From contig NW_027362763.1 of NCBI RefSeq assembly GCF_046119375.1, forward strand, positions 417,012,001 to 417,076,000: a DNA stretch of 64,000 nt, in the 5' to 3' direction. The translations under genes and the position numbers were made by a program. The notes under the pieces were generated by a model. The model was given only the letters and a program-made list of their open reading frames with translations, searched no databases and had not been told where the DNA came from. This DNA comes from Phyllobates terribilis (lineage: Eukaryota). Of this stretch, positions 20,243-64,000 are shown piece after piece (positions within the stretch are counted from its first letter, which is position 1; each line of letters starts with the position of its first letter).

Positions 20243-20247
20243 ACTTT

Positions 20248-20266: not shown

Positions 20267-20621
20267 TCGTGCCCGCCACCAACGGGTACTGCGTGCCTGA
20301 AGAAAGACTGTAATACTTACCTTGGTGGAGTTTCCCGCCATCCGCAGCCGTTTCCCGCCATCTGCAGCCATTTTCCCGCCATCGGGCGCCATCTTTGGGA
20401 CGCCGCGCGGGAAGAAGAGGGACGTGGACGACGAAAGCGCGCGAGAACTGGAGCCCCGCCTTACGCACGGATGCTGCGCAAGGTCCTGAAAGGAGCCGAG
20501 CGGACGCTGACGTCACCAGGACGCGACGCAAGGTCCTCAACCCCGACGGTCGCCTGCGGAGTCGCGGCCTACAGAAGAAAAGCAACGGAAGGTAGGCCAC
20601 GGTTGACTAGGGGGGAAGAAA

Positions 20622-25741: not shown

Positions 25742-26183
25742 ATGCAATGTATATATACCTGTAAATTGCAAATGTTAAAATGTTTGTTGCTTGCATACTA
25801 ATTATGTTTTTCTAATTACCCGACAGGGTTCATGGACTAACAGGTTATGGACAATGAATAACCGGAACTGTACCTTGTACATAGTTGCACCTGGTAAGGT
25901 GCCCTCTTTTGAAGATGACCACAGAGCACAAAACCCGTGGAGGTGGCTGAAGACATGGTCCAACTCCAGATCATCAAAGCCCTGTAGCCACCCCAGGGCC
26001 TACGTGGAGGGTTTGGGACGGGTCCCTCAAAGTGCATCTTGGGTGACAAGGACACCTGATTACGGGAGCGCCGTGACCTAAAAAGACTAAACTTCTTGTA
26101 TATATGTTAGTGTATTGTTATTACCTGTTATGTTTTTGCAAAATGTGTTTAGTCCCGGAGTACTAAATTTCACTAGGGGGGAA

Positions 26184-29200: not shown

Positions 29201-29562
29201 TGCTGACAAGCTGACCCTCATCAAAATGAACAAGAACTGGATTGGACCAGACTTCTCATCACCACCAAATGACAGCAGAGTAACATAAAGTCAAATCCAC
29301 TGTGTTATTTCGGGAGGTGTATTCCCATGCACCGCTTCACACCCACACATGGGTATACGCTTCCTCATTTCGGCTGTATTTTGCTCTTCTCCTTATCCTC
29401 AGCCTCCACCACCATTATACCACCAGGGTGACCTTGGTCCGTGTTGCCAGCATTGCAAGTTCCTCTGTCTTAATTTTTGGTAGCTTTTGTTTGGAAGGCA
29501 TAGGAAAAGATTATGGGAGACCCACTCTGGGAATAATGTTTTTAAGATGCTGTACTGCATGG

Positions 29563-46466: not shown

Positions 46467-48098
46467 CAGTTATATGAAAAAGTTTGGGCACCCCTATTAA
46501 TCTTAAGCTTAATGATTTCTTAAAATTGGTGTTTTTGCAACAGCTATTTCAGTTTGATATATGTAATAACTGTTGGACACAGTAATGTTTTTGCCTTGAA
46601 ATGAGGTTTATTGTACTAACAGAAAATGTGCAATCTGCATTCAAACAAAATTTGAAAGGCGCATAAGTATGGGTACCCTTATCATTTTCTTGTTTTAAAT
46701 ACTCCTACCTACTTTTTACTGACTTACTAAAGCACTTTTTTTGGTTTTGTAACCTCACTGAGCTTTGAACTTCATAGCCAGGTGTATGCAATCATGAGAA
46801 AAGCTACTTAAAGTGGCCACTTGCAAGTTGTTCTCCTGTTTGAATCTCCTCTGAAGAGTGGCATCATGGGCTCCTCAAAACAACTGTCAAATGATCTGAA
46901 AACAAAGATTATTCAACATAGTTGTTCAGGGGAAGGATACAAAAAGCTGTCTCAGAGATTTAACCTGTCAGTTTCCACTGTGAGGAACATATTAAGGAAA
47001 TGGAAGAACGCAGGGACAGTTCTTGTTAAGGCCAGAAGTGGCAGGCCAAGAAAAACATCAGAAAGGCAGAGAAGAAGAATGGTGAGATCAGTCAAGGACA
47101 ATCCTCAGACCACCTCCAGAGAGCTGCAGCATCAACTTGCTGCAGATGGTGTCACTGTGCATCGGTCAACTATACAACGCACTTTGCACAAGGAGAAGCT
47201 GTATGGGAGAGTGATGCGAAAGAAGCCGTTTCTGCAAGCACGCCACAAACAGAGTCGGCTGAGGTATGCAAAAGCACATTTGGAGAAGCCAATTTGTTTT
47301 TGGAAGAAGGTCCTGTGGACTGATGAAACCAAGATTGAGTTGTTTGGTCATACAAAAAGGCGTTATGCATGGCGGCAAAAAAACACAGCATTCCAAGAAA
47401 AACACTTGCTACACACAGTAAAATTTGGTGGAGGTTCCATCATGCTTTGGGGCTGTGTGGCCAATGCCGGCACCGGGAATCTTTTAAAGTTGAGGGACGC
47501 ATGGATTCCACTCAGTATCAGCAGATTCTTGACAATAATGTTCAAGAATCAGTGACAAAGTTGAAGTTACGCAGGGGATGGATCTTTCAGCAAGACAATG
47601 ATCCAAAACACCGCTCCAAATTTACTCAGGCATTACAATGTTCTGGAATGGCCATCCCAGTCCCCAGACCTGAATATCATTGAACATCTGTGGGACCATT
47701 TGAAGAGGGCTGTCCATGCTCGGCGACCATCAAACTTAACTGAACTGGAATTGTTTTGTAAAGAGGAATGGTCAAAAATACCTTCATCCAGGATCCAGGA
47801 AATCATTAAAAGCTACAGGAAGCGACTAGAGGCTGTTATTTTTGCAAAAGGAGGATCTACTAAATATTAATGTCACTTTTCTGGTGAGGTGCCCATACTT
47901 ATGCACCTGTCAAATTTTGTTTGAATGCAGATTGCACATTTTCTGTTAGTACAATAAACCTCATTTCAAGGCAGAAACATTACTGTGTCCAACAGTTATT
48001 ACATATATCAAACTGAAATAGCTGTTGCAAAAACACCAATTTTTATAAAACATTAAGCTTAAGATTAATAGGGGTGCCCAAACTTTTTCATATAACTG
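46467..48098 (+). mobile_element. Full-length Tc1 element (1632 bp, ~210-bp IR/DR-type TIRs, TA TSD)
   Basis: TA-CAGTTATATGAAAAAGTTTGGGCACCCC ... GGGGTGCCCAAACTTTTTCATATAACTG-TA. Confidence 0.95.
46866..47870 (+). pseudogene. Tc1 DD34E transposase, frameshifted
   Basis: MGSSKQLSNDLKTKII paired-like HTH; WTDETKIELF, QQDNDPKH and WPSQSPDLNIIEHLW motifs; frameshift near 47440 and a short deletion after KHRSKF. Confidence 0.93.
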
Positions 48099-48813
48099 TA
48101 AGTGGTTGTAAGCATGGATAGCTAAGGTCCTGCAATGCCTGCACATGACGGAAGAGATATAGCGAATCAGAAAAACTATACTACATTTCTAATTGTAGGT
48201 ATTTGCTAATATTATTATTATTACACCTACTCCATATTGGGAGAGGATTTTGGAGATGGGAATACCCCTTTAAATACTAGTGTGGACACAATCTTATCAC
48301 TAAGTGGTGGTATTATTCAGTCATTGCAGCATTATTTAGCCCATATGTAGAGAGATTTTTGATCAGTATATATAAATATAGTTTATAAGTTTGCAGGATT
48401 TATTTATGGTGGGACATATTATTAAGGGGTGAAATTAACCAGCACACATTTTCATCGTGAATAATTATCATGCAGTGAAATCGCACATCCTCTTCCTTCT
48501 AGGGTATATAATATCTGCAGGTGCTACAGGTGTTTTAAATGTTTATCAATGGTCCTAATTTTCACCTGAACCCTGAAGTCACTCTAAACTATAAGTGAAG
48601 TTGTTCTCTTCTGTTGGGCTTTCAGAGACTTCTGAATGAAAAACATTTTTTCAGTTATTTAGGCTTACTTTGGCAGACTAAACAAATTTAACAATTTAGA
48701 CAAGCAGCACACTTCAAGTTCACATTTAAAAGAAACTCCAGCTAGAAATTCATGAAAATAAAAAGGATATCCTTAAAGACTAATTAATCATTACTACCTT
48801 GACAGTTTCTTAA

Positions 48814-51105: not shown

Positions 51106-52164
51106 TGACTCACCCCCTGGGCCAGTGCTGTAGTGCGGCGCGCGTGCGCGCGGGGGATACCCGGAGCCGGATCCGATGGGGGTAGTAGTCTTCGTGTGGC
51201 GGTGACCCGGTCCGCGCCCAGGGTGGTCAAACTAAGTGTCAGTTATTGGTATGATGGTATTAGTGTCCGACTACGCCACCCGTTGAATGCGGTTATGAAA
51301 CCGCCGCTGCAGGGCAGACCGCTGAGGCCGGTGGTATAGGTGTGCAGCAATGTTGATATAACCCCCAACGGGAGAGGTATGGCCTCAGGGCAGCGGATGT
51401 GGGTGATGTTGGGAGTGATGGTGTGGATGTCCCAGCACTAACGGTGCGACAAGGAAGCACGGAGACGCGAGGGTACAGTTCAGGGCCTTTACTGATGGTA
51501 CAAGGCAAATTCCCCCGGGAGTACTGGCTAGTAGTTGGGGCCTGGTTAGTCTGCGAGTAAGCCGGAGTTCCCCTGGCCAGGTGGAGTTGTAGGCCTTCCC
51601 GTTAGTCTGTACCCTTCCTGGCTACCCTGCTTTCGGCGGTTACAAGTAGCCCACGTCCCTGGGTATACCGTGTGGTGCTCACCCGTATGGCTGGTGACCT
51701 GGGGCCTCCTGTTAGCCTCCGCTCCGGGATGGCGGTGCTGGTCCCTTCGTTGTGACTGAGCCTCCGGGCTTTTATGGCCAGAGGACCTGGAATCCCCTGC
51801 CGGATGGATTCTGCTGCTGGGTATATCTTAGTCCCCACAGCCTCGGACTCCTGTGTCCGGTTTTAGTACCTTCTCCCAGGGCGAGCTCTGCACAGCTCCA
51901 GCCCCTGGCGCTTCTCCTTGGCTCCTACAGAGCTCCTGATGTCTCTCTGTCCCTGTTTCTACGTGTCCAGACCAGACTCCGTCTCTGTCTGGAACTCCTC
52001 TCTCTAACCCTGCCTCAGCCCCAGTTTATGTAGGGGAAGTTCTTCCCCTCCCAGGACTGGGCAGGAGGTGTGGCATGCTTAGGATTCCTGCCCAGGAGAC
52101 CTCCCACCTGCTCACAGACGTAATACTGCTATTACTGTGGAAACCAGACCCCTGGGGTGCCACA
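51106..52164 (-). repeat. Gypsy-2 3' LTR (1059 bp)
   Basis: Near-identical to 58031-59057 plus 63812-63843; PPT complement TTCCCCCCTAG at 52165-52175. Confidence 0.95.
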
Positions 52165-52520
52165 TTCCCCCCTAGTGAAATTTAGTACTCCCGGACTAAA
52201 CATAAACATAACAGGGTATAAACAATAACAATTAAATACATGAGATGGTCACGGCGTGTCCGTAACCGGGAAGCAATAAGGGTGTCCATTTCACCAAAGA
52301 ACAGGGAGCCGTAACCAGGTAGGGGTCTGTCCTGCCCCGAGTCTTTAACAGTCTTTAGTCCATTCCTGGGTTACGCTCCAAACATATTTACAGCAGAGTT
52401 CCGGTTACTCACTGTCCATAACCTGTCAGTCCATATAAAGAAATCTGTAACTGAAAAACATAATTAGCAACGGCTACAACAAAACAGGTAAACATAAAAT
52501 AGTTAAAGCAACTAGCCAAC

Positions 52521-55500
52521 TTAGATTCTCCAACGTACGGGCATCTGGCCTCTGGTATCCCTAGTGGACCTACGGAGCTCACTAACTGGTCCTGCACTAC
52601 AGGGTGTAGAAGGTGTTATGGGCAGGCTGGGCAGCTTTCTGCGCACTCTTTGGCTCACTAGGGGCATGGCAGGCTCACTACTAGCAGAGGGTTGATCCTC
52701 CTGTACTGCTGGTGTGGACTCTTCTGCCTCTTGGGCCGGCTGCTTTTCCAGCTCTACTGGTTCCTCTGTAGGCACTTGCGGGGCTGGCTGGAGAAAGGTG
52801 AGGACGGGTACCACGACAGCACCGTTTACTTGTGTCCAAGACCGGGGGAAGTCTCCGAGTACAGTCCTGATCATTTCTTCCCTTTCCTCTGCGGGTCGAG
52901 GGTTTTCTTGATCTTCTTCTTCAGGGTTTTGCAGCTGCTCGGGACACTTCTTCAGGTGGTCTCTGGAGACAACGGCTGTGGTTTCTCCTCCATCCTTACT
53001 GATCACGCAAATCTTTGGGTTCTCATGGCTTGATGGCAGTACGGTGTACGGGTCCTTCTCCCACTGGTCGTCCAACTTGTGGAGCCGTCTTTTCCTCTTC
53101 AAGACCTGCTCTCCAGGTACCAGGGGAACAGTGGGAGCATACTGATTATAAGCCCTCTCTTGCCTTTCTCTAGCTTGAGACAGACTTCGCTCCACGCTCT
53201 CCTGCACTTTCCGATACTGCTGCTGCCGTCCTGTATCCCAGTCTGCCTCTGGCGAGGTGTCCTCGGGCGTCAGGACTCCCATATCCAGGTCGATAGGCAG
53301 CTTACCAGGCCTCGCTCTCATTAGGTAAGCCGGGGTACAGTTGGTAGAACCTACAGGGATGTGGTTGTATAGGTCCACCAGATCAGGCAGCTTCTCAGGC
53401 CACAGACTGCGTTCTTCCAGGGGCAATGTTTTCAGGAGGTCTATCACCACCTGGTTCATCTTCTCGCAGAGTCCATTAGTCTGTGGGTGATAGGGCGTTG
53501 TTCTTATCTTCGTGCAGCCATACAGGTTGCAGAACTCCTGGAAGACTTCCGCTTCGAAGGCTGGCCCTTGGTCTGTCAGCACTTGGTCCGGGTACCCGTG
53601 TGGACGGCAGAAGTGCTGCTGGAAGGCTCTAGCTGCTGTTTGAGCCGTTAAGTCCTTGACCGGGACCACCACCAGGAACCGGGAGTAATGATCTACGATT
53701 GTAAGGGCGTAGACATACCCAGATCTGCTTGGAGCCAGTTTCACATGGTCCAGGGCTACCAGTTCCAGTGGCTGTCGGGTGATGATGGGCTGCAAGGGAG
53801 TCTTCTGGCTGGCACGGTCCTTCCTTCTTAGGTGGCACGGTCCACAGTCTCTGCACCACCTCTCGATGGCTCCTCTCATGCCTACCCAGTAGAACCGTTC
53901 ACGCAATAAGAACTCCAGCTTCTTCCACCCGAAATGTCCTGCTCCGTTGTGGTACGCCTCCAGAATCATAGCCGCGTCTCGTCTGGGGACCACTACCTGC
54001 CAGGTCAACTCATGTGTTCGAGAGTTAACCATTCTCCGGCACAACTTCTCCCTGTAGAGGAACAGCCTACTTTTCTCCTTCCACAGTTGCTTAGTCTCCT
54101 CTGGGGCGTCTGGGTCCAGACTGGCATCGGCTTGGGTCAGCATTTCCTTCACCAGACGGACTGCAGGATTACTATCTTGCGTCTCCGCCCAGTTGTAGTG
54201 GGGCAAGGGATTGAACGTCGCGGAGCGCCTGTCCTTCACACGGTGGGAATACAGGGTAATCCCATGACGGTGGAACGCAGGGAGCTCAACTTCTTCCAGA
54301 TCTTCTGGATCTTCCCCCACGTCCGGTAAGTTCGGCATTCTAGACAGGGCATCCGCGTTGGCATTTGAGCGTCCTGCCCGGTATTTGATGGTGAATTCAA
54401 AGTTGGACAGGCGAGCCATCCATCTCTGTTCCAGAGCACCGAGCCTTGCAGTGTCCAGGTGTGTCAACGGGTTGTTATCCGTGTACACGATGAATTTGGA
54501 GGAGGCAAGGTAATGCTTGAAACGTTCGGTCACTGCCCACACTACTGCCAGGAACTCCAGCTTGAATGAGCTATAATTCTCAGGGTTCCTCTCGGTGGGT
54601 CGTAGCTTTCGGCTAGCGTAAGCGATTACTCGTTCTTTTCCTTGCTGGATCTGGGACAGCACGGCTCCTAGCCCGATGTTACTTGCGTCCGTGTGGAGGA
54701 TAAAGGGCTGGCTGTAGTCTGGATATGCCAGGATTTCATCCCCCGTGAGGGCCATCTTCAGCTGGCAAAAGGACTCCTCTTCCAGCTTTTCCCACCTGAA
54801 GGGCAGCTTCTGGTTTTTGGCTTTTCGAGATTGACCTATCAGGAGGTCCTGCATAGGGGCTGCCATTTTGGTGAAACCGGGAATGAATCTTCGGTAGTAG
54901 CCTACCAACCCGAGGAACTGCCGCACTTCCTTTATGCTGGAGGGTCTTGGCCAGTCCTTAATCACGGTGATCTTATCAGGGTCAGGAGCCACTCCGTCAG
55001 CACTCACCACGTGTCCCAGGTATTGCACCTTTGGTTTCAGGAGGTGACACTTTGAGGGTTTCACCTTTAGGCCGTAGTTTGCCAGAGCTTCGAACACTTC
55101 TGCCAGGTGTTTCAGGTGGTCCTCGTAGGTCTTGGAATAGACGATGACATCGTCCAGGTATAACAGGACCGTCTCGAAGTTCCGGTGTCCCAGACAGCAT
55201 TCCATCAACCGTTGGAAGGTTCCTGGTGCGTTGCAGAGCCCGAACGGCATACAGTTAAATTCGCTGAGACCCATCGGGGTGGTGAATGCGGTCTTCTCTC
55301 GGTCTGCCTCTGCTACAGGAACCTGCCAGTACCCGCTAGTGAGATCCAAAGTAGAGAAGAAGTTAGCAGATTTTAATGCAGCTAAGGACTCTTCTATCCT
55401 TGGTAACGGGTACGCATCTTTGTGTGTGATACGGTTGACCTTCCTGTAATCTACACACATTCTCATAGTGTTGTCCTTCTTTTTCACTAAGACTAGTGGA

Positions 55501-56660
55501 GCTGCCCAGGGGCTACAGCTGTCCCTGATTACCCCAGCCTCCTTCATGTCTCTAAGCATCCCCTTGGCGTGTTGGTAGTGTGCAGGGGGTACGGGTCGGT
55601 ATCTCTCCTTTATGGGAGGATGGTCTCCCGTGGGGATGTGGTGTTCTACCCCCTTTACTCGCCCGAAGTCTAACGGGTGTTTACTAAACACTCTCTCGTA
55701 CTCTTGAACCACCCGATAGACTCCTTGTTTCTGGTGTGAGGGAGTGGAGTCAGTACCCAAATGTAGTTGCTGACACCAGTCCTCCACTGGTTTCTTAGAG
55801 CCGTTACCTTCCTCTGGTTGAGATGGAGGCAAGGGTTCCACGGCCTGTACAGAATTCTGGTTTATGGTGAACAATTTAGCTAGCGTGGCATACCGGGGCA
55901 GGTGTACTTCTCTCTCACCGATATTTATGATGCGAACGGGCACCCTCCCATGGCGTACATCGACCACCCCCCGTGCTGTCAAAATGGTGGGCCTACTGTC
56001 TGAGTAGACGGGTTCTACCATTGCTTGGTAGTCTCTACCTCTTAGACCAATAGCTGCCCGGCACCAAATCATCATCTCACTTTTTGGGGGCATGGCAATA
56101 GGGAACGGGTCACACATTCTCACGCTACCTATCTCACCACCAGATAGTTCCACCTGTTGCCGCTTCATCAGTGCCCGGATCTCTTTTTGGAGCACTCGCT
56201 GCTGGCCGGAACTGGCGTTCTTGGCAACCTGCTGTAAAATGAGAATCACCTCTGCAAGACAATTTTCAATTACATTGGTTCCCAGGGTGATTCTAGGGTG
56301 ACTCTCATGACGGTCTATGTCCACTATAATGAGTCCTTGTGCCGCCAGTTCGACTTTACCGATTTTAATGGTCACCTCCTTGAATCCCACCTGCGGCACG
56401 GGCTGACCATTGCTGGCGATGATACTCAGGTCGTCGTCTGGGTAGCGGGATATGTCCGAATCATTCCAGTACTGCTTGAAGAGCACGTACGGGATGGTGG
56501 TGACCTGTGACCCAGTGTCTAGTAGGGCACTCATAGGAATGCCATCCAGTACCACAGGCAAGATTGGACGTCCCCCTACGTATTTATCACGCCAGTTTGA
56601 TGGGCCTGATGGTCTTATGCCTGGGGGTTGGCCCTCTACCCCAGGTTGTGCCCGTTTAAA
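52521..56660 (-). CDS. pol: Gypsy-2 Pol (PR-RT-RNase H-integrase), expressed by -1 frameshift from gag
   Basis: Uninterrupted 1419-aa frame: LLDTGSQV, LYLDDVIV, LHTDASNIGLGAVL, H-H-C-C, LVALDH / VLTDQGPAFE / GLCEKMN. Confidence 0.96.
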   Translation of the reverse strand, partial: FKRAQPGVEGQPPGIRPSGPSNWRDKYVGGRPILPVVLDGIPMSALLDTGSQVTTIPYVLFKQYWNDSDISRYPDDDLSIIASNGQPVPQVGFKEVTIKIGKVELAAQGLIIVDIDRHESHPRITLGTNVIENCLAEVILILQQVAKNASSGQQRVLQKEIRALMKRQQVELSGGEIGSVRMCDPFPIAMPPKSEMMIWCRAAIGLRGRDYQAMVEPVYSDSRPTILTARGVVDVRHGRVPVRIINIGEREVHLPRYATLAKLFTINQNSVQAVEPLPPSQPEEGNGSKKPVEDWCQQLHLGTDSTPSHQKQGVYRVVQEYERVFSKHPLDFGRVKGVEHHIPTGDHPPIKERYRPVPPAHYQHAKGMLRDMKEAGVIRDSCSPWAAPLVLVKKKDNTMRMCVDYRKVNRITHKDAYPLPRIEESLAALKSANFFSTLDLTSGYWQVPVAEADREKTAFTTPMGLSEFNCMPFGLCNAPGTFQRLMECCLGHRNFETVLLYLDDVIVYSKTYEDHLKHLAEVFEALANYGLKVKPSKCHLLKPKVQYLGHVVSADGVAPDPDKITVIKDWPRPSSIKEVRQFLGLVGYYRRFIPGFTKMAAPMQDLLIGQSRKAKNQKLPFRWEKLEEESFCQLKMALTGDEILAYPDYSQPFILHTDASNIGLGAVLSQIQQGKERVIAYASRKLRPTERNPENYSSFKLEFLAVVWAVTERFKHYLASSKFIVYTDNNPLTHLDTARLGALEQRWMARLSNFEFTIKYRAGRSNANADALSRMPNLPDVGEDPEDLEEVELPAFHRHGITLYSHRVKDRRSATFNPLPHYNWAETQDSNPAVRLVKEMLTQADASLDPDAPEETKQLWKEKSRLFLYREKLCRRMVNSRTHELTWQVVVPRRDAAMILEAYHNGAGHFGWKKLEFLLRERFYWVGMRGAIERWCRDCGPCHLRRKDRASQKTPLQPIITRQPLELVALDHVKLAPSRSGYVYALTIVDHYSRFLVVVPVKDLTAQTAARAFQQHFCRPHGYPDQVLTDQGPAFEAEVFQEFCNLYGCTKIRTTPYHPQTNGLCEKMNQVVIDLLKTLPLEERSLWPEKLPDLVDLYNHIPVGSTNCTPAYLMRARPGKLPIDLDMGVLTPEDTSPEADWDTGRQQQYRKVQESVERSLSQARERQERAYNQYAPTVPLVPGEQVLKRKRRLHKLDDQWEKDPYTVLPSSHENPKICVISKDGGETTAVVSRDHLKKCPEQLQNPEEEDQENPRPAEEREEMIRTVLGDFPRSWTQVNGAVVVPVLTFLQPAPQVPTEEPVELEKQPAQEAEESTPAVQEDQPSASSEPAMPLVSQRVRRKLPSLPITPSTPCSAGPVSELRRSTRDTRGQMPVRWRI

Positions 56661-57619
56661 TGACAGTACCTTGCCACATGTCCGGGTTGATTGCAGCGGC
56701 GGCAAATAGGTCGTCCGTCCTCGTTGTATCGATCGCTGGGTCTTCCTCTGGCCGGTGGGGTCCTCCTTGGTCGGCGCCACGGGATGTCCTCCGGTCCGGA
56801 TGCCAGCTCGATCTTCCCTGCAGTAGAAACCTGTAAAGACTGCACAGTTCGGGTTAGCGCGGCAACGCTTTTAGTTAGCTCTTGGACCTGATGGTGCAGG
56901 TCTGTAGCCGGGTCACTGTTTAAAGCCTGCGCATCAGCTCCCACAGGCCCTGCAGACAAGGGCGCCATCTCCTGGTGATAAGTGATAGCAGGGCGCCTGT
57001 GGGTCACAGCGCCACCTGGTGCCAGTTCTCGGAGCACCCGGATGGCTCTGTACTTGAACTGTGCAAAGTCCAGGTCAAGGTCCTGTAAGGCCATTGCCCG
57101 CAACTGGGTTCGGTGGGCATTGCACAGTAGACCCTCAATGAATTGTTCAGTCAACAGCTTATCTTCATTTCCCACGCTGTCAGGGTCTGCCTGCTTAATG
57201 GCTCTCAGGGCCTCTTGTAGGTTTAGAGCATAGTCTCTTATACTCTCATGTGCCCGTTGTTTGCACCCATAAAATCTTAGTTTTATTTCGGCTGAGCTGC
57301 GGGTGTCAAATGTGTCTTTCAGCCGGGTTAGTATGTCTCTGACAGTCCTCTTCCTCCCAGGTGGCCAGGACTTTACCTCCCTTTGGGCTGCCCCGATTAA
57401 TTGGGCCACCAGGATGCTCACTTTTTGCGCCTCCGTGAGGGGATACACCTGGAAGACGCTATCCAGCCTTTCTCTGAAGTCATTTAGCGTATGTGACTCC
57501 CCTGAGTACTGGGGTAGCCAGGCTGCCCCCGGGATATAGGGCATGGTGAAAGGCATGACCGCAGCAGCGGTGGCGCTGGCGGCGGCTGTGGCGGTGAAGC
57601 TCTCCTCCGTATCCGACAT
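56636..57619 (-). CDS. gag: Gypsy-2 Gag (PNMA-like capsid, CCHC zinc knuckle), 327 aa
   Basis: Intact ORF ending in CRRCNQPGHVARYC (CX2CX4HX4C). Confidence 0.94.
   Translation of the reverse strand: MSDTEESFTATAAASATAAAVMPFTMPYIPGAAWLPQYSGESHTLNDFRERLDSVFQVYPLTEAQKVSILVAQLIGAAQREVKSWPPGRKRTVRDILTRLKDTFDTRSSAEIKLRFYGCKQRAHESIRDYALNLQEALRAIKQADPDSVGNEDKLLTEQFIEGLLCNAHRTQLRAMALQDLDLDFAQFKYRAIRVLRELAPGGAVTHRRPAITYHQEMAPLSAGPVGADAQALNSDPATDLHHQVQELTKSVAALTRTVQSLQVSTAGKIELASGPEDIPWRRPRRTPPARGRPSDRYNEDGRPICRRCNQPGHVARYCHLNGHNLG
56654..56660 (-). promoter_or_regulatory. -1 ribosomal frameshift slippery site U UUA AAC
   Basis: The gag frame reads TTA AAC and the pol frame reads TTT AAA. It is followed 8 nt later by a CCTGGGG/CCCCAGG stem. 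The same site occurs in Gypsy-1 at 21568-21574. Confidence 0.85.
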
Positions 57620-58007
57620 CCTCCTCCCCCCTAGTGGACCGTGGCCTACCTTGCGATGATCCTCTTCCGTAGGCCGCGGCTCCGCAGTGGATCGTCAGGG
57701 TTGAGGACCTTCCGTCGCGCTCCTGTGACGTCGGCGTCTGCTGGGCTCCTTCCAGGACCTTACGCAACGTCCGGACGTGAGGCGGGGCTTCAGTTCTCGT
57801 GGGCTTTCGGAGTCCACGCCCCTCTTCTTCCCGCGCGGCGCCCTCAGGATGGCGTCCAATGGCGGGAAAACTCCACGGATGGCGGGAAGAAGGCAGAAGA
57901 TGGCGTCGGATGGCGGGAATCGGCTCCAGATGGTGGGAAACTTCACCACAGGTAAGTATAAAAGTCTCTTTTTTCAGGCACGCAGTACCCGGTGGTTACG
58001 GGCACGT

Positions 58008-58026
58008 AATCCTGCCGACTACGCCA
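58008..58026 (-). promoter_or_regulatory. Gypsy-2 primer binding site, tRNA-Ser(AGA/UGA)
   Basis: AATCCTGCCGACTACGCCA on plus, 4 nt from the LTR boundary at 58031. Confidence 0.9.
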
Positions 58027-60233
58027 AAGTTGACTCACCCCCTGGGCCAGTGCTGTAGTGCGGCGTGCGTGCGCGCGGGGGATACCCGGAGCCGGATCCG
58101 ATGGGGGTAGTAGTCTTCGTGTGGCGGTGACCCGGTCCGCGCCCAGGGTGGTCAAACTAAGTGGCAGTTATTGGTATGATGGTATTAGTGTCCGACTACG
58201 CCACCCGTTGAATGCGGTTATGAAACCGCCGCTGCAGGGCAGACCGCTGAGGCCGGTGGTATAGGTGTGCAGCAATGTTGATATAACCCCCAACGGGAGA
58301 GGTATGGCCTCAGGGCAGCGGATGTGGGTGATGTTGGGAGTGATGGTGTGGATGTCCCAGCACTAACGGTGCGACAAGGAAGCACGGAGACGCGAGGGTA
58401 CAGTTCAGGGCCTTTACTGATGGTACAAGGCAAATTCCCCCGGGAGTACTGGCTAGTAGTTGGGGCCTGGTTAGTCTGCGAGTAAGCCGGAGTTCCCCTG
58501 GCCAGGTGGAGTTGTAGGCCTTCCCGTTAGTCTGTACCCTTCCTGGCTACCCTGCTTTCGGCGGTTACAAGTAGCCCACGTCCCTGGGTATACCGTGTGG
58601 TGCTCACCCGTATGGCTGGTGACCTGGGGCCTCCTGTTAGCCTCCGCTCCGGGATGGCGGTGCTGGTCCCTTCGTTGTGACTGAGCCTCCGGGCTTTTAT
58701 GGCCAGAGGACCTGGAATCCCCTGCCGGATGGATTCTGCTGCTGGGTATATCTTAGTCCCCACAGCCTCGGACTCCTGTGTCCGGTTTTAGTACCTTCTC
58801 CCAGGGCGAGCTCTGCACAGCTCCAGCCCCTGGCGCTTCTCCTTGGCTCCTACAGAGCTCCTGATGTCTCTCTGTCCCTGTTTCTGCGTGTCCAGACCAG
58901 ACTCCGTCTCTGTCTGGAACTCCTCTCTCTAACCCTGCCTCAGCCCCAGTTTATGTAGGGGAAGTTCTTCCCCTCCCAGGACTGGGCAGGAGGTGTGGCA
59001 TGCTTAGGATTCCTGCCCAGGAGACCTCCCACCTGCTCACAGATGTAATACTGCTATTGTAGCACCCTGAGGATTCGGCTGCTACAGGGGTATTACACCT
59101 CAAGCCAGAGGTGTGGTATTCCACTCCCGGGTAAGGATGGAGTGTGGAACTGAGCTCAGTTAGCTGCATGCACTACACACATCCCATTTCCGGGGAACAG
59201 ACCGATGGTACTCCCACTAGAGAAATGTGCAGGTACGACAGTGTCTGTTCCTGGCTGGAGTGGGAGGGGGGTGGAACATCCCAGTAGTGTAGGGGCAGAT
59301 AGGGGAAGCAGCCTGGGTAAAGCTAGGAGCTCATTGGGTGCTGGTCACCTGAGCTCACACATAGAGGGAGTATATAAGGTGGGCACCATCTTAGATCAGG
59401 GTCAGTCTGTGAGACGTCGGTCAGTCAGTCTGTCTGAGAGCCTGAGAAGCAGAGCAGAGGAGAAGGAAGAGGGACCCAGAGGCGCAGGAAGAGGGGACCC
59501 CAAGAGCCCATAAGAGAGCTAATAGGGTGAAGGGTCGGCAACAGGGTACCGGATCCCAAGCTGGTGGAGGCTACAGTACTAATCCTCAGCCAGAGACCGG
59601 AGGTCGTGGGCAGGATCTGCCACGACCACCCACTAAATCCACCCGGAAGGCAGACCAAGAATAGGGTCAGGGAGCCCAGAGGAGGCTTGACCAACAAGAG
59701 GCCCGAGGGAGCCGGACTTAGGTGGATCCCTGGTGGGAACGGCCAGAAGAAGGGAGAGTCAGAAAGGAGCTCAGGACCACACTCCGGAGTTGCCTGGGAG
59801 TTGACCGAGTCCAGGACCTGGTGGACGCAGCACGGCTCGGGTGGTCACTGCTGTACACAGTGACCCGAGCAACACCAGTAAGTAAAACCCTGGAACTGCA
59901 TTTTATGCCTCTGAGTCTCTTTGCTGCACCTTCACAACCACCATCCTCCACGGCTGACCCCCTGAGGCTATACCCCTCCCGTTGGGGGTTATACTACCAA
60001 AGCTGCACACATACCAACAGCCTCAGCGGACCCTGCTGCAGCGGCGGCCTTTTGACCGCAAATCAACGGGTGGCGTAGTCGACACAAAGAACTAATAACA
60101 TCTGTAGGACTGCCACACTCTGAGCTTGACACCCTGGGCACGGACCGGGTCACAGCCACTCGGAGACTACAACCCCCATCTGATCCGGCTCCGGGTATCC
60201 CCAACAACACTGGCCCAGGGGGCGCGTCAACTT

Positions 60234-60252
60234 TGGCGTAGTCGGCAGGATT
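60234..60252 (+). promoter_or_regulatory. PBS of the CSD element, tRNA-Ser(AGA/UGA)
   Basis: TGGCGTAGTCGGCAGGATT, identical to the PBS of Gypsy-1 and Gypsy-2. Confidence 0.9.
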
Positions 60253-60410
60253 ACGTGCCCGCAACAACCGGGTACTGCGTGCCTGAAGAAAAGTTCACCG
60301 TTACCTTAAAAAGAAGTCTCCCGCCGGTTCCGGAGGGTCCCCGCCAACGGACCCCATCACAGGTCGTTTCCCGCCGGTTGTCCGCCATTTGCAGCTTTTT
60401 CCCGCCATCC

Positions 60411-62183
60411 ATGGAGTTTCCCGCCACTGGGAGACGATTCCCGCCATTTCCGAAGATTTCCCGCCTTGGAAGAGCGGACGCCATTATGGGCGTGCCAGAG
60501 GGTGGCAAGAGGCCACCTCCCATCGTGGGCCAGGTCGAAGAATGGCGCCAAAAGCGGAAACCGCGCCCACCAACAGAGACTGTGATGCTGGAAGTGTCCA
60601 TCAGCGTGAGAGAACTGCCCCTGGAACTGACAATCACTAAGTTGCCCCGGGACCACCCTCAATGTGGGCGGAGACAGAACAAGAGAGCAAAGATGGGTGC
60701 AGCCTGGAGAAGTCTGGAGAGAGCGCACCCGGAGACAAGAAGTCTGGAGAGGAGTCCAGAGAAAGCCTACCCGGAGATGGAGGGAGAGTCAGGCAGCACC
60801 GACCCAGTGGTCAGGAGCCTGTTGCAGGTCGCCACTCCAGAAGGCCTGCTGGAGATCCTAACACAGCTCCCCCGAGACCGGGAGTGTGCACAGACCGCGT
60901 TGGAGGGCCTCGCACGGAGGATGGCCCGGGTACAGCGAGAGACGTTGGCGGAGTGGAGCCGAGAGATGGCCCAGCAGACCGGAACCCGTCAGCGGAGCAC
61001 GCCGCCCGAGACGAGGAGACAGACCGCCTCTGAGGATGGCGCAGGAGGAATGAAGGCAGGAGACGGCGCCGAGAAGGGAGCTGAACGGACGGAGGCAGGT
61101 AAAGGGGACGTCTCTACCCCGAGCCGGGAAACCGCGTGCCTGCCCCAGCTCCCCGTCGCAGAGCCCGAAATTCCCCCTGCCGTGCCCGTCGCTGCATCGT
61201 CACCGCCGCAGACTAGGCCTCAACCGGAAGCCGCGGCCGCGACCCCTGTGACGTCACGCGCTTCGACCCTGAGCGCGGCAAAGCAGGAAATACCACCGGC
61301 CTGGTCGCAAGGCCTAGTACCCCCGGGCGCCGCTATTCCAACAGCGCCCCCACCGGCCTGGCCGCAGGGCCGAGTAACCACGGGCGCCGCCGTTCTTACG
61401 GTGCCCTTTTCCTTTAGCGTGCCCCAAGCCTGGTCGCAAGGCCTGGTCAACCCGGGCGCCGCTACCACCACAGCGCCCATAGCACCTAAAGTGCCGCACC
61501 TGGGTGAAAATCTATTTGCCCAGCATACGTGCCCGGATGGGCAGCCCTTCATATGGCCCCAGGAGTACATTCAGCTGGAACTCCAGAGAGCAAGGCCCAT
61601 GTGCGAGCCCCTGATTCCGGCTCCGAAGCCCGTAAAGAGGACCTCACCCCCGCTGGAGGGGGCACAGTTTGAGTGGGACCCCACCGGAGAAGACCTCATG
61701 GGGTTCACTCAGGAGACTCGGGCGGCCGCAGCGGAGCGTGCAGAGTGCTGCCGGCAGCAGCTCGAGGTCTTCGAGAGGGAGCGGAGAGAGAGGCGGGTCC
61801 GGGAACAGCAAGCGCAGATAAGGAGCGCGGAGCAGAAGAGCCGGACCAGGAGGAATCCCCGTGCAGCTCATGGTCCCCCTTCCACCGGGACTGTGATAAA
61901 ATTCAACATGCAGCATGGGTGGGGCTTCATTAGAGACCATCATACCCCCGGCGACGTCTTTGTGACCCGCAGAGACGTAGAAAGCCATCTGCCGGAGGGA
62001 CACAGAGGTCGTGACCTGTATGTAGGGGACGAGGTCACCTTCACCCGGCACAAGTGTGCCAAAGGACCCTACGCCCTCCATGTGCATCGCCTGACAGAGG
62101 AGGAGCTGCGGTGTGAGGAGGAGCAAGAGGACCCGGACGGGTCTGAAGAATCTAAAGAAGGAGCAGGAGGACGCCGTCATTGA
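60411..62183 (+). CDS. ~590-aa protein: helical N-terminal region, Pro/Ala-rich repeats, coiled coil, C-terminal cold-shock domain, acidic tail
   Basis: The first ATG after the PBS is at 60411 (frame open from 60126). Codons 61884-62094 read TGTVIKFNMQHGWGFIRDHHTPGDVFVTRRDVESHLPEGHRGRDLYVGDEVTFTRHKCAKGPYALHVHRL, matching the CSD pattern GTVKWFN..GYGFI...DVFVH...GE.VEF...KG..A..V. Confidence 0.85.
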   Translation: MEFPATGRRFPPFPKISRLGRADAIMGVPEGGKRPPPIVGQVEEWRQKRKPRPPTETVMLEVSISVRELPLELTITKLPRDHPQCGRRQNKRAKMGAAWRSLERAHPETRSLERSPEKAYPEMEGESGSTDPVVRSLLQVATPEGLLEILTQLPRDRECAQTALEGLARRMARVQRETLAEWSREMAQQTGTRQRSTPPETRRQTASEDGAGGMKAGDGAEKGAERTEAGKGDVSTPSRETACLPQLPVAEPEIPPAVPVAASSPPQTRPQPEAAAATPVTSRASTLSAAKQEIPPAWSQGLVPPGAAIPTAPPPAWPQGRVTTGAAVLTVPFSFSVPQAWSQGLVNPGAATTTAPIAPKVPHLGENLFAQHTCPDGQPFIWPQEYIQLELQRARPMCEPLIPAPKPVKRTSPPLEGAQFEWDPTGEDLMGFTQETRAAAAERAECCRQQLEVFERERRERRVREQQAQIRSAEQKSRTRRNPRAAHGPPSTGTVIKFNMQHGWGFIRDHHTPGDVFVTRRDVESHLPEGHRGRDLYVGDEVTFTRHKCAKGPYALHVHRLTEEELRCEEEQEDPDGSEESKEGAGGRRH

Positions 62184-64000
62184 AGTACGGTAGAGAGAGA
62201 CTGTACATAGTTACCCGTCAGGGTATAAGAACTGTTCTAGTTAAAATATAGTCCCCGTTGGGACCAGCAGATTGAACTGAAACCCGTGTGTCCCTATTCC
62301 CACTGACCGAGGACTGAGAGCGGTCATTCCTCCCTAATACCTGGCCGAGGACTGAGAGCGGCCATATTTCCCTTGTATATAGTTGCGCTTCCTAAAGCGC
62401 CCCCTACCGGTTTTATAGGGAACTGTTTTATTCCAAGAGAGACTGTCGCACCTTACCCGGTCACAAGTTGCACCGTGACCGGAGGAACCAGAAACAAGAA
62501 TGTTATTTATATGAAAAGTTTACTGCTGATATATATATATGATGTTTTCTATGTTTATGTTTATGAAAAAAATTGTATGTTTTGGATGTTTATATCTTAC
62601 AGCCCGAGGACGTGCTGTGATTTACCAGGGGGGAATGTAGCACCCTGAGGATTCGGCTGCTACAGGGGTATTACACCTCAAGCCAGAGGTGTGGTATTCC
62701 ACTCCCGGGTAAGGATGGAGTGTGGAACTGAGCTCAGTTAGCTGCATGCACTACACACATCCCATTTCCGGGGAACAGACCGATGGTACTCCCACTAGAG
62801 AAATGTGCAGGTACGACAGTGTCTGTTCCTGGCTGGAGTGGGAGGGGGGTGGAACATCCCAGTAGTGTAGGGGCAGATAGGGGGAGCAGCCTGGGTAAAG
62901 CTAGGAGCTCATTGGGTGCTGGTCACCTGAGCTCACACATAGAGGGAGTATATAAGGTGGGCACCATCTTAGATCAGGGTCAGTCTGTGAGACGTCGGTC
63001 AGTCAGTCTGTCTGAGAGCCTGAGAAGCAGAGCAGAGGAGAAGGAAGAGGGACCCAGAGGCGCAGGAAGAGGGGACCCCAAGAGCCCATAAGAGAGCTAA
63101 TAGGGTGAAGGGTCGGCAACAGGGTACCGGATCCCAAGCTGGTGGAGGCTACAGCACTAATCCTCAGCCAGAGACCGGAGGTCGTGGGCAGGATCTGCCA
63201 CGACCACCCACTAAATCCACCCGGAAGGCAGACCAAGAATAGGGTCAGGGAGCCCAGAGGAGGCTTGACCAACAAGAGGCCCGAGGGAGCCGGACTTAGG
63301 TGGATCCCTGGTGGGAACGGCCAGAAGAAGGGAGAGTCAGAAAGGAGCTCAGGACCACACTCCGGAGTTGCCTGGGAGTTGACCGAGTCCAGGACCTGGT
63401 GGACGCAGCACGGCTCGGGTGGTCACTGCTGTACACAGTGACCCGAGCAACACCAGTAAGTAAAACCCTGGAACTGCATTTTAGGCCTCTGAGTCTCTTT
63501 GCTGCACCTTCACAACCACCATCCTCCACGGCTGACCCCCTGAGGCTATACCCCTCCCGTTGGGGGTTATACTACCAAAGCTGCACACATACCAACAGCC
63601 TCAGCGGACCCTGCTGCAGCGGCGGCCTTTTGACCGCAAATCAACGGGTGGCGTAGGCGACACAAAGAACTAATAACATCTGTAGGACTGCCACACTCTG
63701 AGCTTGACACCCTGGGCACGGACCGGGTCACAGCCACTCGGAGACTACAACCCCCATCTGATCCGGCTCCGGGTATCCCCAACAACACTGGCCCAGGGGG
63801 CGCGTCACTATTACTGTGGAAACCAGACCCCTGGGGTGCCACAAAAGCGCAATGAGCATGACAAAACTGAGGAAATAATGGCTCTAGCCATCCATGACTA
63901 ACAAGTTATAAGAGTTCCAGACATGTGGATCATAGATCCGCTGGGTTTTGGCTCTTCTGGAACTTAGAAACTGCTCCACATTCGAGAGTGCAACAGGCAC

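What the first reader, a model, noticed from the sequence alone, without database searches (positions are those of the whole stretch)
59058..63807. Young non-autonomous LTR element that carries an intact cold-shock-domain (Y-box-like) protein gene in place of gag/pol
Seen in sequence: two 1172-bp LTRs differing at about 4 positions, a 4-bp TSD (CTAT), a tRNA-Ser PBS, a PPT, and a 2.4-kb interior with one uninterrupted ORF of ~590 aa. The ORF has no capsid, protease, RT, RNase H or integrase motifs. Its C-terminus is a clear CSD with RNP1-like HGWGFI and RNP2-like DVFVT. By eye it is far too diverged from YBX1 (GTVKWFNVRNGYGFI...DVFVH) to be a recent host retrocopy. Established: CSD proteins (YBX1, FRGY2, LIN28) are single-stranded nucleic-acid chaperones, and FRGY2 packages maternal mRNA in frog oocytes. 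Inference: this is a mobile, protein-coding parasite of the Gypsy family next to it, with its own RNA-binding accessory protein, possibly for RNA packaging or stabilisation in the germline or for recruiting the helper's Gag-Pol. I know of no described LTR element with this architecture but cannot search to confirm.
Basis: partly seen in the sequence, partly recalled or inferred. Interest (0 to 1): 0.93.

Follow-up and report, generated by a model that had tools for sequence, protein, structure and literature searches.

The report
Frog LTR retrotransposon carrying cold-shock gene
This is a young jumping gene in a frog genome that has lost its own copying enzymes, appears to borrow those of the Gypsy element it landed in, and instead carries one intact gene for a cold-shock-type nucleic-acid-binding protein, a layout that recurs in several poison frogs and a toad.

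Summary
There are two 1172-bp LTRs with 4 mismatches, a 4-bp TSD (CTAT), a PBS, a PPT, a 2.4-kb interior and one 590-aa ORF. The ORF's C-terminus passes the Pfam CSD threshold. The element sits inside the 5' LTR of an intact minus-strand Gypsy, and that Gypsy's other LTR supplies the empty site, so this is a real integration. It shares LTR termini, U5, an identical PBS, leader and PPT with that Gypsy, but has no gag or pol.

The same layout, LTR-PBS-single CSD ORF-PPT-LTR at about 4.6-5 kb, occurs in Anomaloglossus (two loci), Ranitomeya variabilis (two loci, both damaged) and Bufo bufo. A decayed copy with only weak flanking repeats occurs in R. imitator. Across these copies the CSD codons show saturated synonymous change but limited non-synonymous change. 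The rest of the protein is mostly predicted disorder plus a long charged helix, with no Gag-like fold.

The CSD is closest to Y-box proteins at profile level but only 26-38% identical, so it is not a recent host retrocopy. No paper found describes a CSD-bearing LTR element. What the protein does was not tested here. An RNA-binding helper for the element's own transcript is my inference. Verdict: a new variant of a known kind, interest 0.72.

The parts
59054..59057 (+). 5' target-site duplication CTAT
   Evidence: The same 4 nt follow the 3' LTR. The empty site is seen in the Gypsy 3' LTR at 52129-52132.
59058..60229 (+). 5' LTR, 1172 bp, TG...CA. About 59058-59926 is U3/R, unique to this family apart from the first ~10 nt. 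About 59927-60229 is U5, homologous to the Gypsy LTR.
   Evidence: 4 mismatches against the 3' LTR; 59927-60291 is 77% identical to Gypsy 58348-57969. The TATA-like motif at 59371 and AGTAAA at 59881 are pattern matches only.
60234..60252 (+). Primer-binding site TGGCGTAGTCGGCAGGATT
   Evidence: Its first 18 nt (TGGCGTAGTCGGCAGGAT) were searched and match exactly in both Gypsy copies of the window, at 58009 (-) and 20248 (+). The tRNA-Ser assignment is from memory.
60230..60410 (+). Leader. 60230-60291 is near-identical to the Gypsy leader and includes a hairpin-capable GTGCCCG...CGGGTAC. Repeated TTCCCGCC motifs run from about 60320 into the ORF start.
   Evidence: (I1, 93% over 88 nt).
60411..62183 (+). 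Single ORF, 590 aa, stop included. The only coding capacity of the interior.
   Evidence: (72-75% identical to Phyllobates terribilis XP_073514116).
61293..61478 (+). Three imperfect 57-bp (19-aa) Pro/Ala-rich repeats inside the ORF, in a region predicted to be disordered
61710..61853 (+). Long charged (E/R/K/Q-rich) alpha-helix, aa 434-481, directly upstream of the CSD
   Evidence: pLDDT 81-98. The composition is conserved across the family.
61878..62090 (+). Cold-shock domain, aa 490-560, five-stranded beta-barrel
62184..62626 (+). 3' untranslated interior. The last ~30 nt (CAGCCCGAGGACGTGCTG...) are conserved in the Anomaloglossus elements.
62627..62635 (+). Polypurine tract AGGGGGGAA
   Evidence: The same 9-mer precedes the Gypsy 3' LTR.
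62636..63807 (+). 3' LTR, 1172 bp
63808..63811 (+). 3' target-site duplication CTAT
51106..63843 (-). Host and putative helper: a full Gypsy element.
- LTRs of 1059 bp lie at 51106-52164 and at 58031-59057 plus 63812-63843.
- gag is 56636-57619 (PNMA-like, one CCHC knuckle).
- pol is 52521-56780 in the -1 frame (PR-RT-RH-IN).
- The TSD AAAG lies at 51102-05 and 63844-47.
- The CSD element is nested 32-36 nt from the outer end of its 5' LTR.

Best explanation
This is a recently integrated, non-autonomous derivative of a Ty3/Gypsy LTR retrotransposon. It keeps only the cis-acting parts that a Gypsy reverse transcriptase and integrase need: LTR tips, U5, PBS, proximal leader and PPT. It has its own U3/R, meaning its own promoter. 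In place of gag-pol it carries one gene.

That gene encodes a largely disordered Pro/Ala-rich protein that ends in a long charged helix, a divergent Y-box-type cold-shock domain and an acidic tail.

**Shown:** the anatomy, the true integration, the shared cis elements, recurrence of the architecture in hyloid frogs, and purifying selection on the CSD.

**Inferred:**
1. Gag-Pol of the related autonomous Gypsy family copies and integrates the element in trans.
2. The CSD protein binds single-stranded nucleic acid, preferentially the RNA it was translated from. This would stabilise or chaperone that RNA and favour its entry into helper particles. It would work like LINE-1 ORF1p, or like the delta antigen of a satellite virus, rather than like Gag.
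3. Because only copies with a working ORF propagate well, the ORF stays intact in young copies.
For: **Integration**
- LTRs are 99.66% identical, with a TSD and an empty site.

**Helper link**
- U5 through PBS and leader is 77% identical overall, 93% over the 88 nt spanning the LTR end, PBS and leader. The 18-nt PBS and the PPT are identical. Both elements make a 4-bp TSD.
- The neighbouring Gypsy has open gag and pol carrying all the enzymatic domains.

**No coding capacity of its own for transposition**
-.

**Family recurrence**
- L002 Anomaloglossus: 1284-bp LTRs at 99.5%, TSD GGCCC.
- L005 Anomaloglossus: 1.15-kb LTRs at 99.8%, TSD TAAA.
- L004 Bufo bufo: 1132-bp LTRs at 96.8%.
- L007 R. 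variabilis: LTRs at 98.7%, 3' LTR truncated at its end.
- L006 R. variabilis: degraded LTRs.
- Sources.

**Selection**
- In the CSD block pN is 0.27-0.52 and pS is 0.66-1.0 in all 15 pairs. About half or more of the identical residues use different codons.
- Against P0001 the CSD block has about 5 differences in 79 residues, while the protein overall is 72-75% identical.

**Fold**
- The CSD barrel has blockwise pLDDT of about 64-95. It superposes on CspA (TM 0.89) and YBX1 (TM 0.80).

**Precedent for a Y-box protein aiding retroelement RNA**
- YB-1 is reported as a cofactor of HIV-1 replication and is found with MMTV Gag and RNA (PMC6040738, PMC4486188).
Against: - No binding, expression or mobilisation data exist.
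- Two of the four aromatic or His residues that stack on RNA in YB-1 are replaced in this copy: the position of W65 is K and the position of H87 is T (alignment; the residue roles come from my knowledge of YB-1 structures). Canonical binding is therefore not assured.
- One fairly young R. variabilis copy (L007, LTRs 98.7%) has an open ORF whose CSD no longer hits Pfam. Mobilisation may not strictly need an intact CSD.
- Trans-mobilised non-coding elements such as VL30 (PMC4859993) show that no ORF is needed in principle.
- Copy number in the source genome is unknown.
- U3/R and most of the interior are unrelated to the neighbouring Gypsy, so the true helper could be another subfamily.
Confidence: 0.6

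Rival explanations
1. Neutral passenger. A CSD gene, or a fragment of one, was transduced once into a defective Gypsy. It is simply carried along and plays no part in propagation.
For: Non-coding non-autonomous LTR elements propagate without any ORF (VL30, PMC4859993). The L007 copy has a degenerate CSD but 98.7% identical LTRs. The L001 copy carries a stop.
Against: ORFs of 328-590 aa remain open in six of the seven genomic loci (the R. imitator copy carries a stop). Their synonymous sites are saturated relative to each other, yet the CSD keeps pN at roughly 0.3-0.6 of pS. The CSD, together with the LTR tips, PBS and PPT, is the only part still alignable at DNA level between species.
Confidence: 0.13
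2. Host-level function. The CSD genes are host genes, domesticated or LTR-promoted, kept by selection on the frog. The LTR context is incidental or ancestral.
For: NCBI annotates several as genes (LOC143808358, LOC142258684 and others). L006 has lost U5, PBS and leader on its 5' side yet keeps a 382-aa ORF directly behind LTR sequence.
Against: The loci lie in different places with their own TSDs and near-identical LTRs, so they are recent insertions and not orthologous genes. Two divergent lineages coexist in Anomaloglossus. The window copy lies inside another transposon's LTR.
Confidence: 0.1
3. Counter-defence or regulator. The protein acts as a Y-box mimic on host pathways, for example mRNA masking or decay in germ cells, or small-RNA silencing. 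Alternatively it acts on the helper itself. In either case it is not a packaging chaperone for its own RNA.
For: The profile is closest to YB-1/YBX2. Like Y-box proteins, it has an Ala/Pro-rich region N-terminal of the CSD (Y-box architecture from my own knowledge). Y-box proteins package maternal mRNA in frog oocytes (established knowledge).
Against: Nothing here separates this from the chaperone model. The RNA-contact residues have diverged. The Y-box C-terminal basic/acidic islands are absent.
Confidence: 0.14
4. The ORF is a very diverged Gag, making this a gag-only element like plant TR-GAG/BARE2 or Xenopus 1a11.
For: It occupies the gag position immediately after the leader. Some helices are predicted at aa 91-190.
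Against: BLASTP and hhalign against the neighbouring Gag find nothing. The first 490 aa hit no Pfam family even at E 10. There is no CCHC knuckle. AlphaFold gives no globular capsid-like domain, with 321 of 590 residues below pLDDT 50. Foldseek against PDB and BFVD returns only CSD proteins.
Confidence: 0.03

Closest known systems
Non-autonomous LTR retrotransposons mobilised in trans (plant LARD/TRIM, mouse ETn and VL30)
   Same: Intact LTRs, PBS and PPT are shared with an autonomous family. There is no pol, so the element depends on a helper. VL30 is described as a non-autonomous LTR retrotransposon in PMC4859993.
   Different: Those interiors are non-coding, from my own knowledge for LARD, TRIM and ETn. 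Here the interior is one long ORF for a folded nucleic-acid-binding domain, conserved across frog lineages.
Gag-only elements (plant BARE2/TR-GAG; Xenopus 1a11, a Gag-like 71-kDa ORF, PMC4585706) and ORF1-only LINE derivatives (HAL1)
   Same: A parasitic retroelement keeps a single RNA-binding or structural ORF and borrows the enzymes.
   Different: The retained ORF here is not derived from the element's own gag. It is a foreign CSD protein with no Gag similarity.
LTR retrotransposons that acquired extra host-type domains (env, chromodomain, the AlkB ORF in orchid Gypsy; PMC9289625)
   Same: A nucleic-acid-related domain was acquired and has been kept through rounds of replication. PMC9289625 notes that acquired domains are biased towards RNA and DNA interaction.
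   Different: In those cases the extra ORF sits beside an intact gag-pol. Here it is the sole ORF. None of the four full-text paper searches pairing 'cold shock domain' with retrotransposon, LTR or transposable-element terms returned a transposon with a cold-shock domain, and two poison-frog genome papers do not mention one.
Replication-defective transducing retroviruses, and satellite agents that encode only an RNA-binding protein (hepatitis delta antigen)
   Same: A helper-dependent genome whose coding space is taken up by a non-replicative gene. The delta antigen is the closest functional analogy for a satellite that brings its own RNA-binding protein. This comparison is from my own knowledge.
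   Different: No recent host progenitor is identifiable, since the CSD is 26-38% identical to the YB-1 CSD. The cargo has persisted across frog families. Acutely transforming retroviruses, by contrast, are short-lived.
Vertebrate Y-box proteins (YBX1/2/3, FRGY2)
   Same: Best profile match: 55 bits, E 4e-14, ahead of bacterial CspA (45), LIN28 (29), CSDE1 (24) and CARHSP1 (24). The long beta3-beta4 loop aligns with a single 1-residue gap.
   Different: Only 26-38% identical, whereas YB-1 against a bacterial Csp is 48%. The positions of W65 and H87 are replaced. There is no basic/acidic C-terminal domain, and the gene sits in an LTR element.
Xenopus Xretpos(L)
   Same: A frog LTR element with a single ORF, tens of copies and a developmental phenotype on injection (PMC4585706).
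   Different: I could not obtain its sequence here, so the relationship is untested.

Membership tests
LTR retrotransposon (structural definition) | Two direct LTRs ending TG...CA, flanked by a short target-site duplication | tested here: met
   1172-bp LTRs, 4 mismatches, TSD CTAT, with the empty site in the paralogous Gypsy LTR.
LTR retrotransposon (structural definition) | A PBS complementary to a tRNA 3' end just inside the 5' LTR, and a polypurine tract abutting the 3' LTR | tested here: met
   The PBS begins TGG, complementary to the tRNA's CCA end. The identity of the tRNA (Ser) is from memory and was not tested by a tool.
Ty3/Gypsy (Metaviridae) | pol with the order PR-RT-RH-IN and a Gypsy-type RT | tested here: not met
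   The element has no pol. It can be filed only as a Gypsy-derived non-autonomous element, through cis-sequence homology to a Gypsy that does meet this feature.
LARD / TRIM | An interior without protein-coding capacity | tested here: not met
   A 590-aa ORF with a Pfam domain fills 74% of the interior.
Cold-shock domain (PF00313) | Score above the Pfam gathering threshold | tested here: met
   34.6 bits against 27. Relatives: L005 32.1, P0004 33.7 and P0045 44.2 are above the threshold. L002, L003 and P0002 score 23.7-24.5, below it. P0024 has no hit.
Cold-shock domain (PF00313) | Five-stranded OB-type beta-barrel | tested here: met
   AlphaFold strands at 490-499, 504-509, 515-519, 541-549 and 552-560, with blockwise pLDDT of about 64-95 across the barrel. 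Foldseek TM 0.89 to CspA and 0.80 to the YBX1 CSD.
Cold-shock domain (PF00313) | RNP1/RNP2 aromatic and His residues that stack on single-stranded nucleic acid | tested here: inconclusive
   The alignment shows the F of GWGFI and the F of VFV retained, while the position of W65 is K and the position of H87 is T. A conserved RR follows RNP2 in most members.
Vertebrate Y-box protein family | A near-invariant CSD, plus a C-terminal domain of alternating basic and acidic clusters | tested here: not met
   35% identity to the YB-1 CSD. The printed human and zebrafish stretches are identical to each other. The tail after the CSD is about 30 aa and mostly acidic.
Retroelement Gag | A capsid-like helical two-domain fold and/or a CCHC nucleocapsid knuckle | tested here: not met
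   The neighbouring Gypsy Gag does have a PNMA-like domain and a CCHC knuckle.
Helper-dependent (trans-mobilised) element of the neighbouring Gypsy family | Actual mobilisation by that family's Gag-Pol | not testable with these tools
   Only the shared cis elements are shown.

The most novel reading that the evidence does not exclude
A long-lived satellite retrotransposon lineage of hyloid frogs has replaced gag-pol with a self-encoded cold-shock-domain RNA chaperone. That chaperone acts on the element's own RNA to get it stabilised and packaged by Gypsy helpers, or to shield it from germline mRNA masking or silencing. This would be a third kind of retroelement RNA-coating protein, independently recruited, beside Gag-NC and LINE ORF1p.
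Probability: 0.3. Interest if true: 0.85.

Novelty: new variant of a known kind. Interest (0 to 1): 0.72.

Why it matters
Non-autonomous LTR elements are usually seen as stripped-down, non-coding hitch-hikers. Domain gains by LTR retrotransposons are regarded as rare (PMC9289625). This parasite of a parasite has discarded all canonical genes yet kept a foreign nucleic-acid-binding gene under selection in dendrobatoid frogs and in a toad, and it is still jumping.

If the protein promotes the element's own propagation, it gives a tractable system for three questions:
- How do retroelement RNAs compete for helper particles?
- Which minimal functions must be supplied in cis?
- Why do Y-box-type proteins keep turning up as retroviral cofactors?

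It is also relevant to transposon-driven genome gigantism in poison frogs, and to genome annotation, because several copies are currently annotated as ordinary uncharacterised genes or as "YBX2-A-like".

Tried and rejected
1. **Gag relic.** Rejected. BLASTP and hhalign against the neighbouring Gag, Pfam at E 10, AlphaFold and Foldseek on PDB and BFVD all found nothing.
2. **Recent YBX retrocopy.** Rejected on identity.
3. **An autonomous version carrying both gag-pol and the CSD.** The 9.9-kb L005 element looked like one. Its extra 4.6 kb is a nested Penelope-like insertion (RT-like ORF with a GIY-YIG-like motif, read by eye, no Pfam hit) flanked by a 263-bp duplication, not gag-pol.
4. **More family members.** Two further word-index protein searches found only P0001 or nothing. 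The exact window protein is not on record. DNA for the closest relative (P. terribilis) was unavailable, so no dN/dS could be computed between close copies.
5. **Other copies in the window.** There are none. Only a solo LTR of a sister family was found.
6. **Conserved RNA structure after the PBS.** The hairpin is predicted in three elements, but the energies are not better than shuffles (z about -0.7) except in L002, and the stems do not covary. Inconclusive.
7. **tRNA-Ser check.** No tRNA gene was found in the window or in the five loci scanned, L001, L002, L004, L005 and L006.
8. **Literature.** No paper returned by four full-text searches pairing 'cold shock domain' with retrotransposon, LTR or transposable-element terms describes a transposon carrying one, and two poison-frog genome papers do not mention the term. 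Repbase and Dfam could not be queried.
9. **CSD phylogeny against frog YBX, LIN28 and CSDE1.** Ranking of profile scores was used instead.
Full report
**1. The observation**

All the structural claims hold.
- The two LTRs are 59058-60229 and 62636-63807. Each is 1172 bp, runs TG...CA, and they differ at four positions.
- CTAT flanks both ends.
- Four nucleotides after the 5' LTR lies TGGCGTAGTCGGCAGGATT, at 60234-60252. This is a PBS that begins with the complement of a tRNA CCA end.
- AGGGGGGAA at 62627-62635 abuts the 3' LTR.
- The 2406-bp interior has one long ORF on the + strand. It is 590 aa from the first ATG at 60411 (context ccATGg), or 685 aa from an upstream TTG.
- Pfam finds only CSD (PF00313), at 34.6 bits against a gathering score of 27, E 1.7e-8. 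The first 490 residues match no family even at E 10.
- The tRNA-Ser assignment rests on my recollection of the vertebrate tRNA-Ser(AGA) 3' end. No tRNA gene was available for a tool check.

**2. A real insertion, nested in its likely helper**

- The flanking DNA is not anonymous. A complete Gypsy element lies on the minus strand at 51106-63843.
- Its gag (56636-57619) is PNMA-like with one CCHC knuckle. Its pol (52521-56780) is in the -1 frame and carries PR, RT, RNase H and IN.
- Its LTRs are 1059 bp and 99.5% identical over the 1033 bp that BLAST aligned. Its own 4-bp TSD, AAAG, lies at 51102-05 and 63844-47.
- The CSD element sits 32-36 nt from the outer end of that Gypsy's 5' LTR.
- The Gypsy's undisturbed 3' LTR reads ...CTGCTATTACTGTGG.... 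The disrupted LTR reads ...CTGCTAT[element]CTATTACTGTGG....
- This paralogous empty site proves integration with a 4-bp duplication, so chance is excluded.
- Transcription of an LTR element starts in R of the 5' LTR, and U3 is regenerated from the 3' LTR. An insertion at the extreme outer edge of the 5' U3 therefore need not disable the helper. This last point is inference.

**3. Relationship to the Gypsy family**

- BLASTN of the element against the window shows that 59927-60291 (U5, PBS and proximal leader) is 77% identical to both Gypsy copies in the window. Those copies are the neighbour and a broken one at about 20-26 kb.
- The 88 nt spanning the LTR end, PBS and leader are 93% identical.
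- The 18-nt PBS is identical.
- The LTR tips correspond: TGTAGCACCC against TGTGGCACCCC at one end, and ...CCCAGGGGGCGCGTCA against ...CCCAGGGGGTGAGTCA at the other.
- The PPT 9-mer is identical.
- A run of TTCCCGCC motifs in the leader is also shared. The ORF's ATG lies in that leader-derived stretch.
- U3/R (59058-59926) and the remainder of the interior are unrelated to the Gypsy.
- In short, the element keeps what a Gypsy RT and IN must recognise. It has its own promoter region and no enzymes.

**4. The protein**

- AlphaFold, run with a nine-sequence family alignment, gives mean pLDDT 54.5. Of 590 residues, 321 are below 50.
- The confident parts are a helix at 157-190, a long charged helix at 434-481 (pLDDT 81-98) and a five-stranded barrel at 490-560.
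- Foldseek against PDB returns only cold-shock proteins: CspA at TM 0.89 and the YBX1 CSD at 0.80. Against viral models it again returns only CSD proteins, with no Gag.
- BLASTP and hhalign against the neighbouring Gag find nothing.
- A profile of the family's CSD scores best on vertebrate Y-box proteins (YB-1 and YBX2, 54-55 bits, E about 4e-14). Bacterial CspA scores 45, LIN28 29, CSDE1 24 and CARHSP1 24.
- The long beta3-beta4 loop aligns to YB-1 with one single-residue gap, but needs a 5-residue gap against a bacterial Csp.
- Identity to the YB-1 CSD is only 26-38%, whereas YB-1 against a bacterial Csp is 48%. The printed human and zebrafish YB-1 stretches are identical.
- The domain is therefore Y-box-like in type but far outside the host YBX clade. 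It is not a recent retrocopy.
- Of the four residues I know to stack on RNA in YB-1, the two Phe are kept. The positions of W65 and H87 are K and T. Nucleic-acid binding is plausible but not assured.

**5. The architecture recurs**

An exhaustive HMMER scan of 1.84 billion representative proteins found one close relative and a set of relatives about 30-50% identical. All the named ones come from hyloid frogs. The multi-CSD proteins further down the list look unrelated in context.

The close relative is Phyllobates terribilis XP_073514116, at 75% identity. No DNA could be fetched for it.

| Locus | Species | Protein | LTRs | Other features |
|---|---|---|---|---|
| L002 | Anomaloglossus baeobatrachus | 481-aa ORF | 1284 bp, 99.5% | TSD GGCCC; 2.3-kb interior; U5/PBS and PPT/LTR start 72-76% identical to the window element |
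| L005 | Anomaloglossus baeobatrachus | 549 aa | 1.15 kb, 99.8% | TSD TAAA; nested Penelope-like insertion |
| L004 | Bufo bufo | annotated "YBX2-A-like" | 1132 bp, 96.8% | PBS one mismatch from the Anomaloglossus PBS |
| L007 | Ranitomeya variabilis | 328 aa | about 1 kb, 98.7% | 3' LTR truncated at its end |
| L006 | Ranitomeya variabilis | 382 aa | degraded, 94-96% | 5' U5, PBS and leader deleted |
| L001 | Ranitomeya imitator | broken | only a weak 233-bp flanking repeat at 85% | in-frame stop and broken CSD end, a dead copy |

One further relative comes from an unnamed sequencing run (Logan ERR14218477, L003).

Five loci besides the window thus show LTRs around a single CSD ORF with no gag-pol. 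Three of them are structurally complete and two are damaged. They come from three named species in Dendrobatidae, Aromobatidae and Bufonidae, and the source species of the window is not known. A conserved CAGCCCGAGGACGTGCTG motif precedes the PPT in the window element and in both Anomaloglossus elements.

**6. Selection**

- In a 68-codon CSD block from six copies with DNA, proportional synonymous differences are 0.66-1.0, which is saturated. Non-synonymous differences are 0.27-0.52 in all 15 pairs. About half or more of the identical residues use different codons.
- Between the window protein and P0001 the CSD block has about 5 differences in 79 residues, against 72-75% identity overall.
- At the DNA level only the CSD, LTR tips, U5/PBS and PPT remain alignable across species.
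- This is the footprint of purifying selection on the CSD over a long period.
- A second, weaker conserved block precedes the charged helix in the dendrobatid subgroup. It contains an aromatic-x-W-D/Q motif and then L/F-M/I-G-F.
- Caveat: the L007 copy has an open ORF, but its CSD has drifted and gives no Pfam hit.

**7. Mechanism**

*Shown:* a Gypsy-derived, helper-type cis skeleton, its own promoter region, a single conserved CSD ORF, and recent integration.

*Inferred:*
- Gag-Pol of the related Gypsy family mobilises the element in trans.
- The protein binds the RNA that encodes it through the CSD, possibly with the adjacent basic and charged helix.
- It then stabilises or chaperones that RNA and biases its entry into helper particles.
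- This would work like LINE-1 ORF1p or a satellite's own RNA-binding protein.

Selection acting through propagation would explain why young copies are intact and old ones decay. Host YB-1 is reported as a cofactor of HIV-1 replication and is found with MMTV Gag and RNA (PMC6040738, PMC4486188), which makes a self-encoded Y-box-like factor biologically reasonable.

The rivals, with my rough weights:
- Neutral passenger: 0.13.
- Host-level or domesticated gene: 0.10.
- Y-box mimic acting on host pathways or on the helper: 0.14.
- Diverged Gag: 0.03.

**8. Comparison with what is known**

- It works like a trans-mobilised non-autonomous LTR element (LARD, ETn, VL30; PMC4859993). It fails the "non-coding interior" feature of those classes.
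- It resembles gag-only elements (BARE2, TR-GAG, Xenopus 1a11; PMC4585706), but the ORF is not Gag.
- It resembles Gypsy lineages that gained extra RNA- or DNA-related domains, such as AlkB in orchids (PMC9289625). There the extra ORF accompanies gag-pol.
- The nearest conceptual analogues are transducing defective retroviruses and satellites that encode only an RNA-binding protein.
- I found no paper describing a CSD in any LTR element. Repbase and Dfam could not be searched.

**9. Verdict**

It can be extended: this is a family found in dendrobatid, aromobatid and bufonid frogs, not a one-off. It is a new variant of a known kind.

Confidence is about 0.85-0.9 for the structural and evolutionary statement, about 0.4 for the specific RNA-chaperone and packaging role, and 0.6 for the two combined. 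Interest is 0.72.

The source species is unknown. A dendrobatid poison frog is likely, given 75% identity to a Phyllobates protein, but that is inference. The window has no N runs, and no toxin or effector genes came up in any search or scan run here.

Noticed in passing
window 5786-6997 (-): A solo LTR of a sister family. It is 67-72% identical to the CSD element's LTR along its length, U3 parts included. It starts TGTAGCACC and ends GCGTCA, has a 4-bp TSD GAAC, and no PBS follows it.
   Followed up: partly
window ~19960-26000 (+): A second copy of the same Gypsy family, with an identical PBS at 20248. Its gag is PNMA-like (20622-21461). Its pol is split into several ORFs (21649-23409, 23450-24985), so it is a damaged copy.
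   Followed up: partly
window 60320-60470 and 57850-57930 (-): TTCCCGCC(A) motifs repeated about every 20 nt in the leaders of both the CSD element and the Gypsy. They resemble E2F or YY1 core sites, a comparison made from memory. The CSD ORF's ATG lies in one unit where the Gypsy has GTG.
   Followed up: no
window 60256-60276; 58004-57984 (-); L002 9760-9781: A hairpin-capable GTGCCCG-loop-CGGGTAC directly 3' of the PBS is conserved in the element, the Gypsy and the Anomaloglossus L002 element, with different loops. Fold energies are not better than shuffles except in L002 (z -3.3), and there is no covariation.
   Followed up: partly
window 29563-32022: A 52-bp satellite with 47 copies at 83% matches. 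It explains the strong negative GC skew there.
   Followed up: partly
window 46266-48275: A Tc1/mariner (Sleeping Beauty-type) element with inverted repeats of about 200-400 nt (97% and 89%). Its transposase ORF (46821-47555) is truncated to the HTH domains only.
   Followed up: partly
window 1-3564 (+), 26623-29288 (+), 35477-38722 (-): Three hAT-type transposase regions with a BED zinc finger and the hAT dimerisation domain. The first is an open 1187-aa frame that runs from the window's first base.
   Followed up: partly
L005 5367-9983: A Penelope-like element is nested in the N-terminal part of the Anomaloglossus CSD ORF. I identified it by eye from an RT-like ORF ending in a GIY-YIG-like motif; it has no Pfam hit. 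It is flanked by a perfect 263-bp duplication that includes the ORF's start, so an intact CSD ORF persists downstream.
   Followed up: partly
L002 9997-11412 (-): An antisense ORF of 471 aa is almost co-extensive with the 481-aa CSD ORF. The window copy does not share it (longest antisense ORF 178 aa), so it is probably a composition effect.
   Followed up: no
L002 7784-8450 and 13320-13853; L004 4001-7874 and 13560-21363: The Anomaloglossus L002 element is embedded in a tandem-repeat array, and the Bufo bufo L004 element lies between two. This may hint at insertion into, or survival in, heterochromatic DNA.
   Followed up: no
L006 9217-11149: The R. variabilis copy has lost U5, PBS and leader, so its 382-aa ORF starts 4 nt after LTR-derived sequence. 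It is annotated as LOC143808358. It is a candidate for an immobilised, possibly domesticated copy.
   Followed up: no
window 62308-62368: Two copies of CCGAGGACTGAGAGCGG(T/C)CAT, about 38 nt apart, in the element's 3' untranslated region. Function unknown.
   Followed up: no
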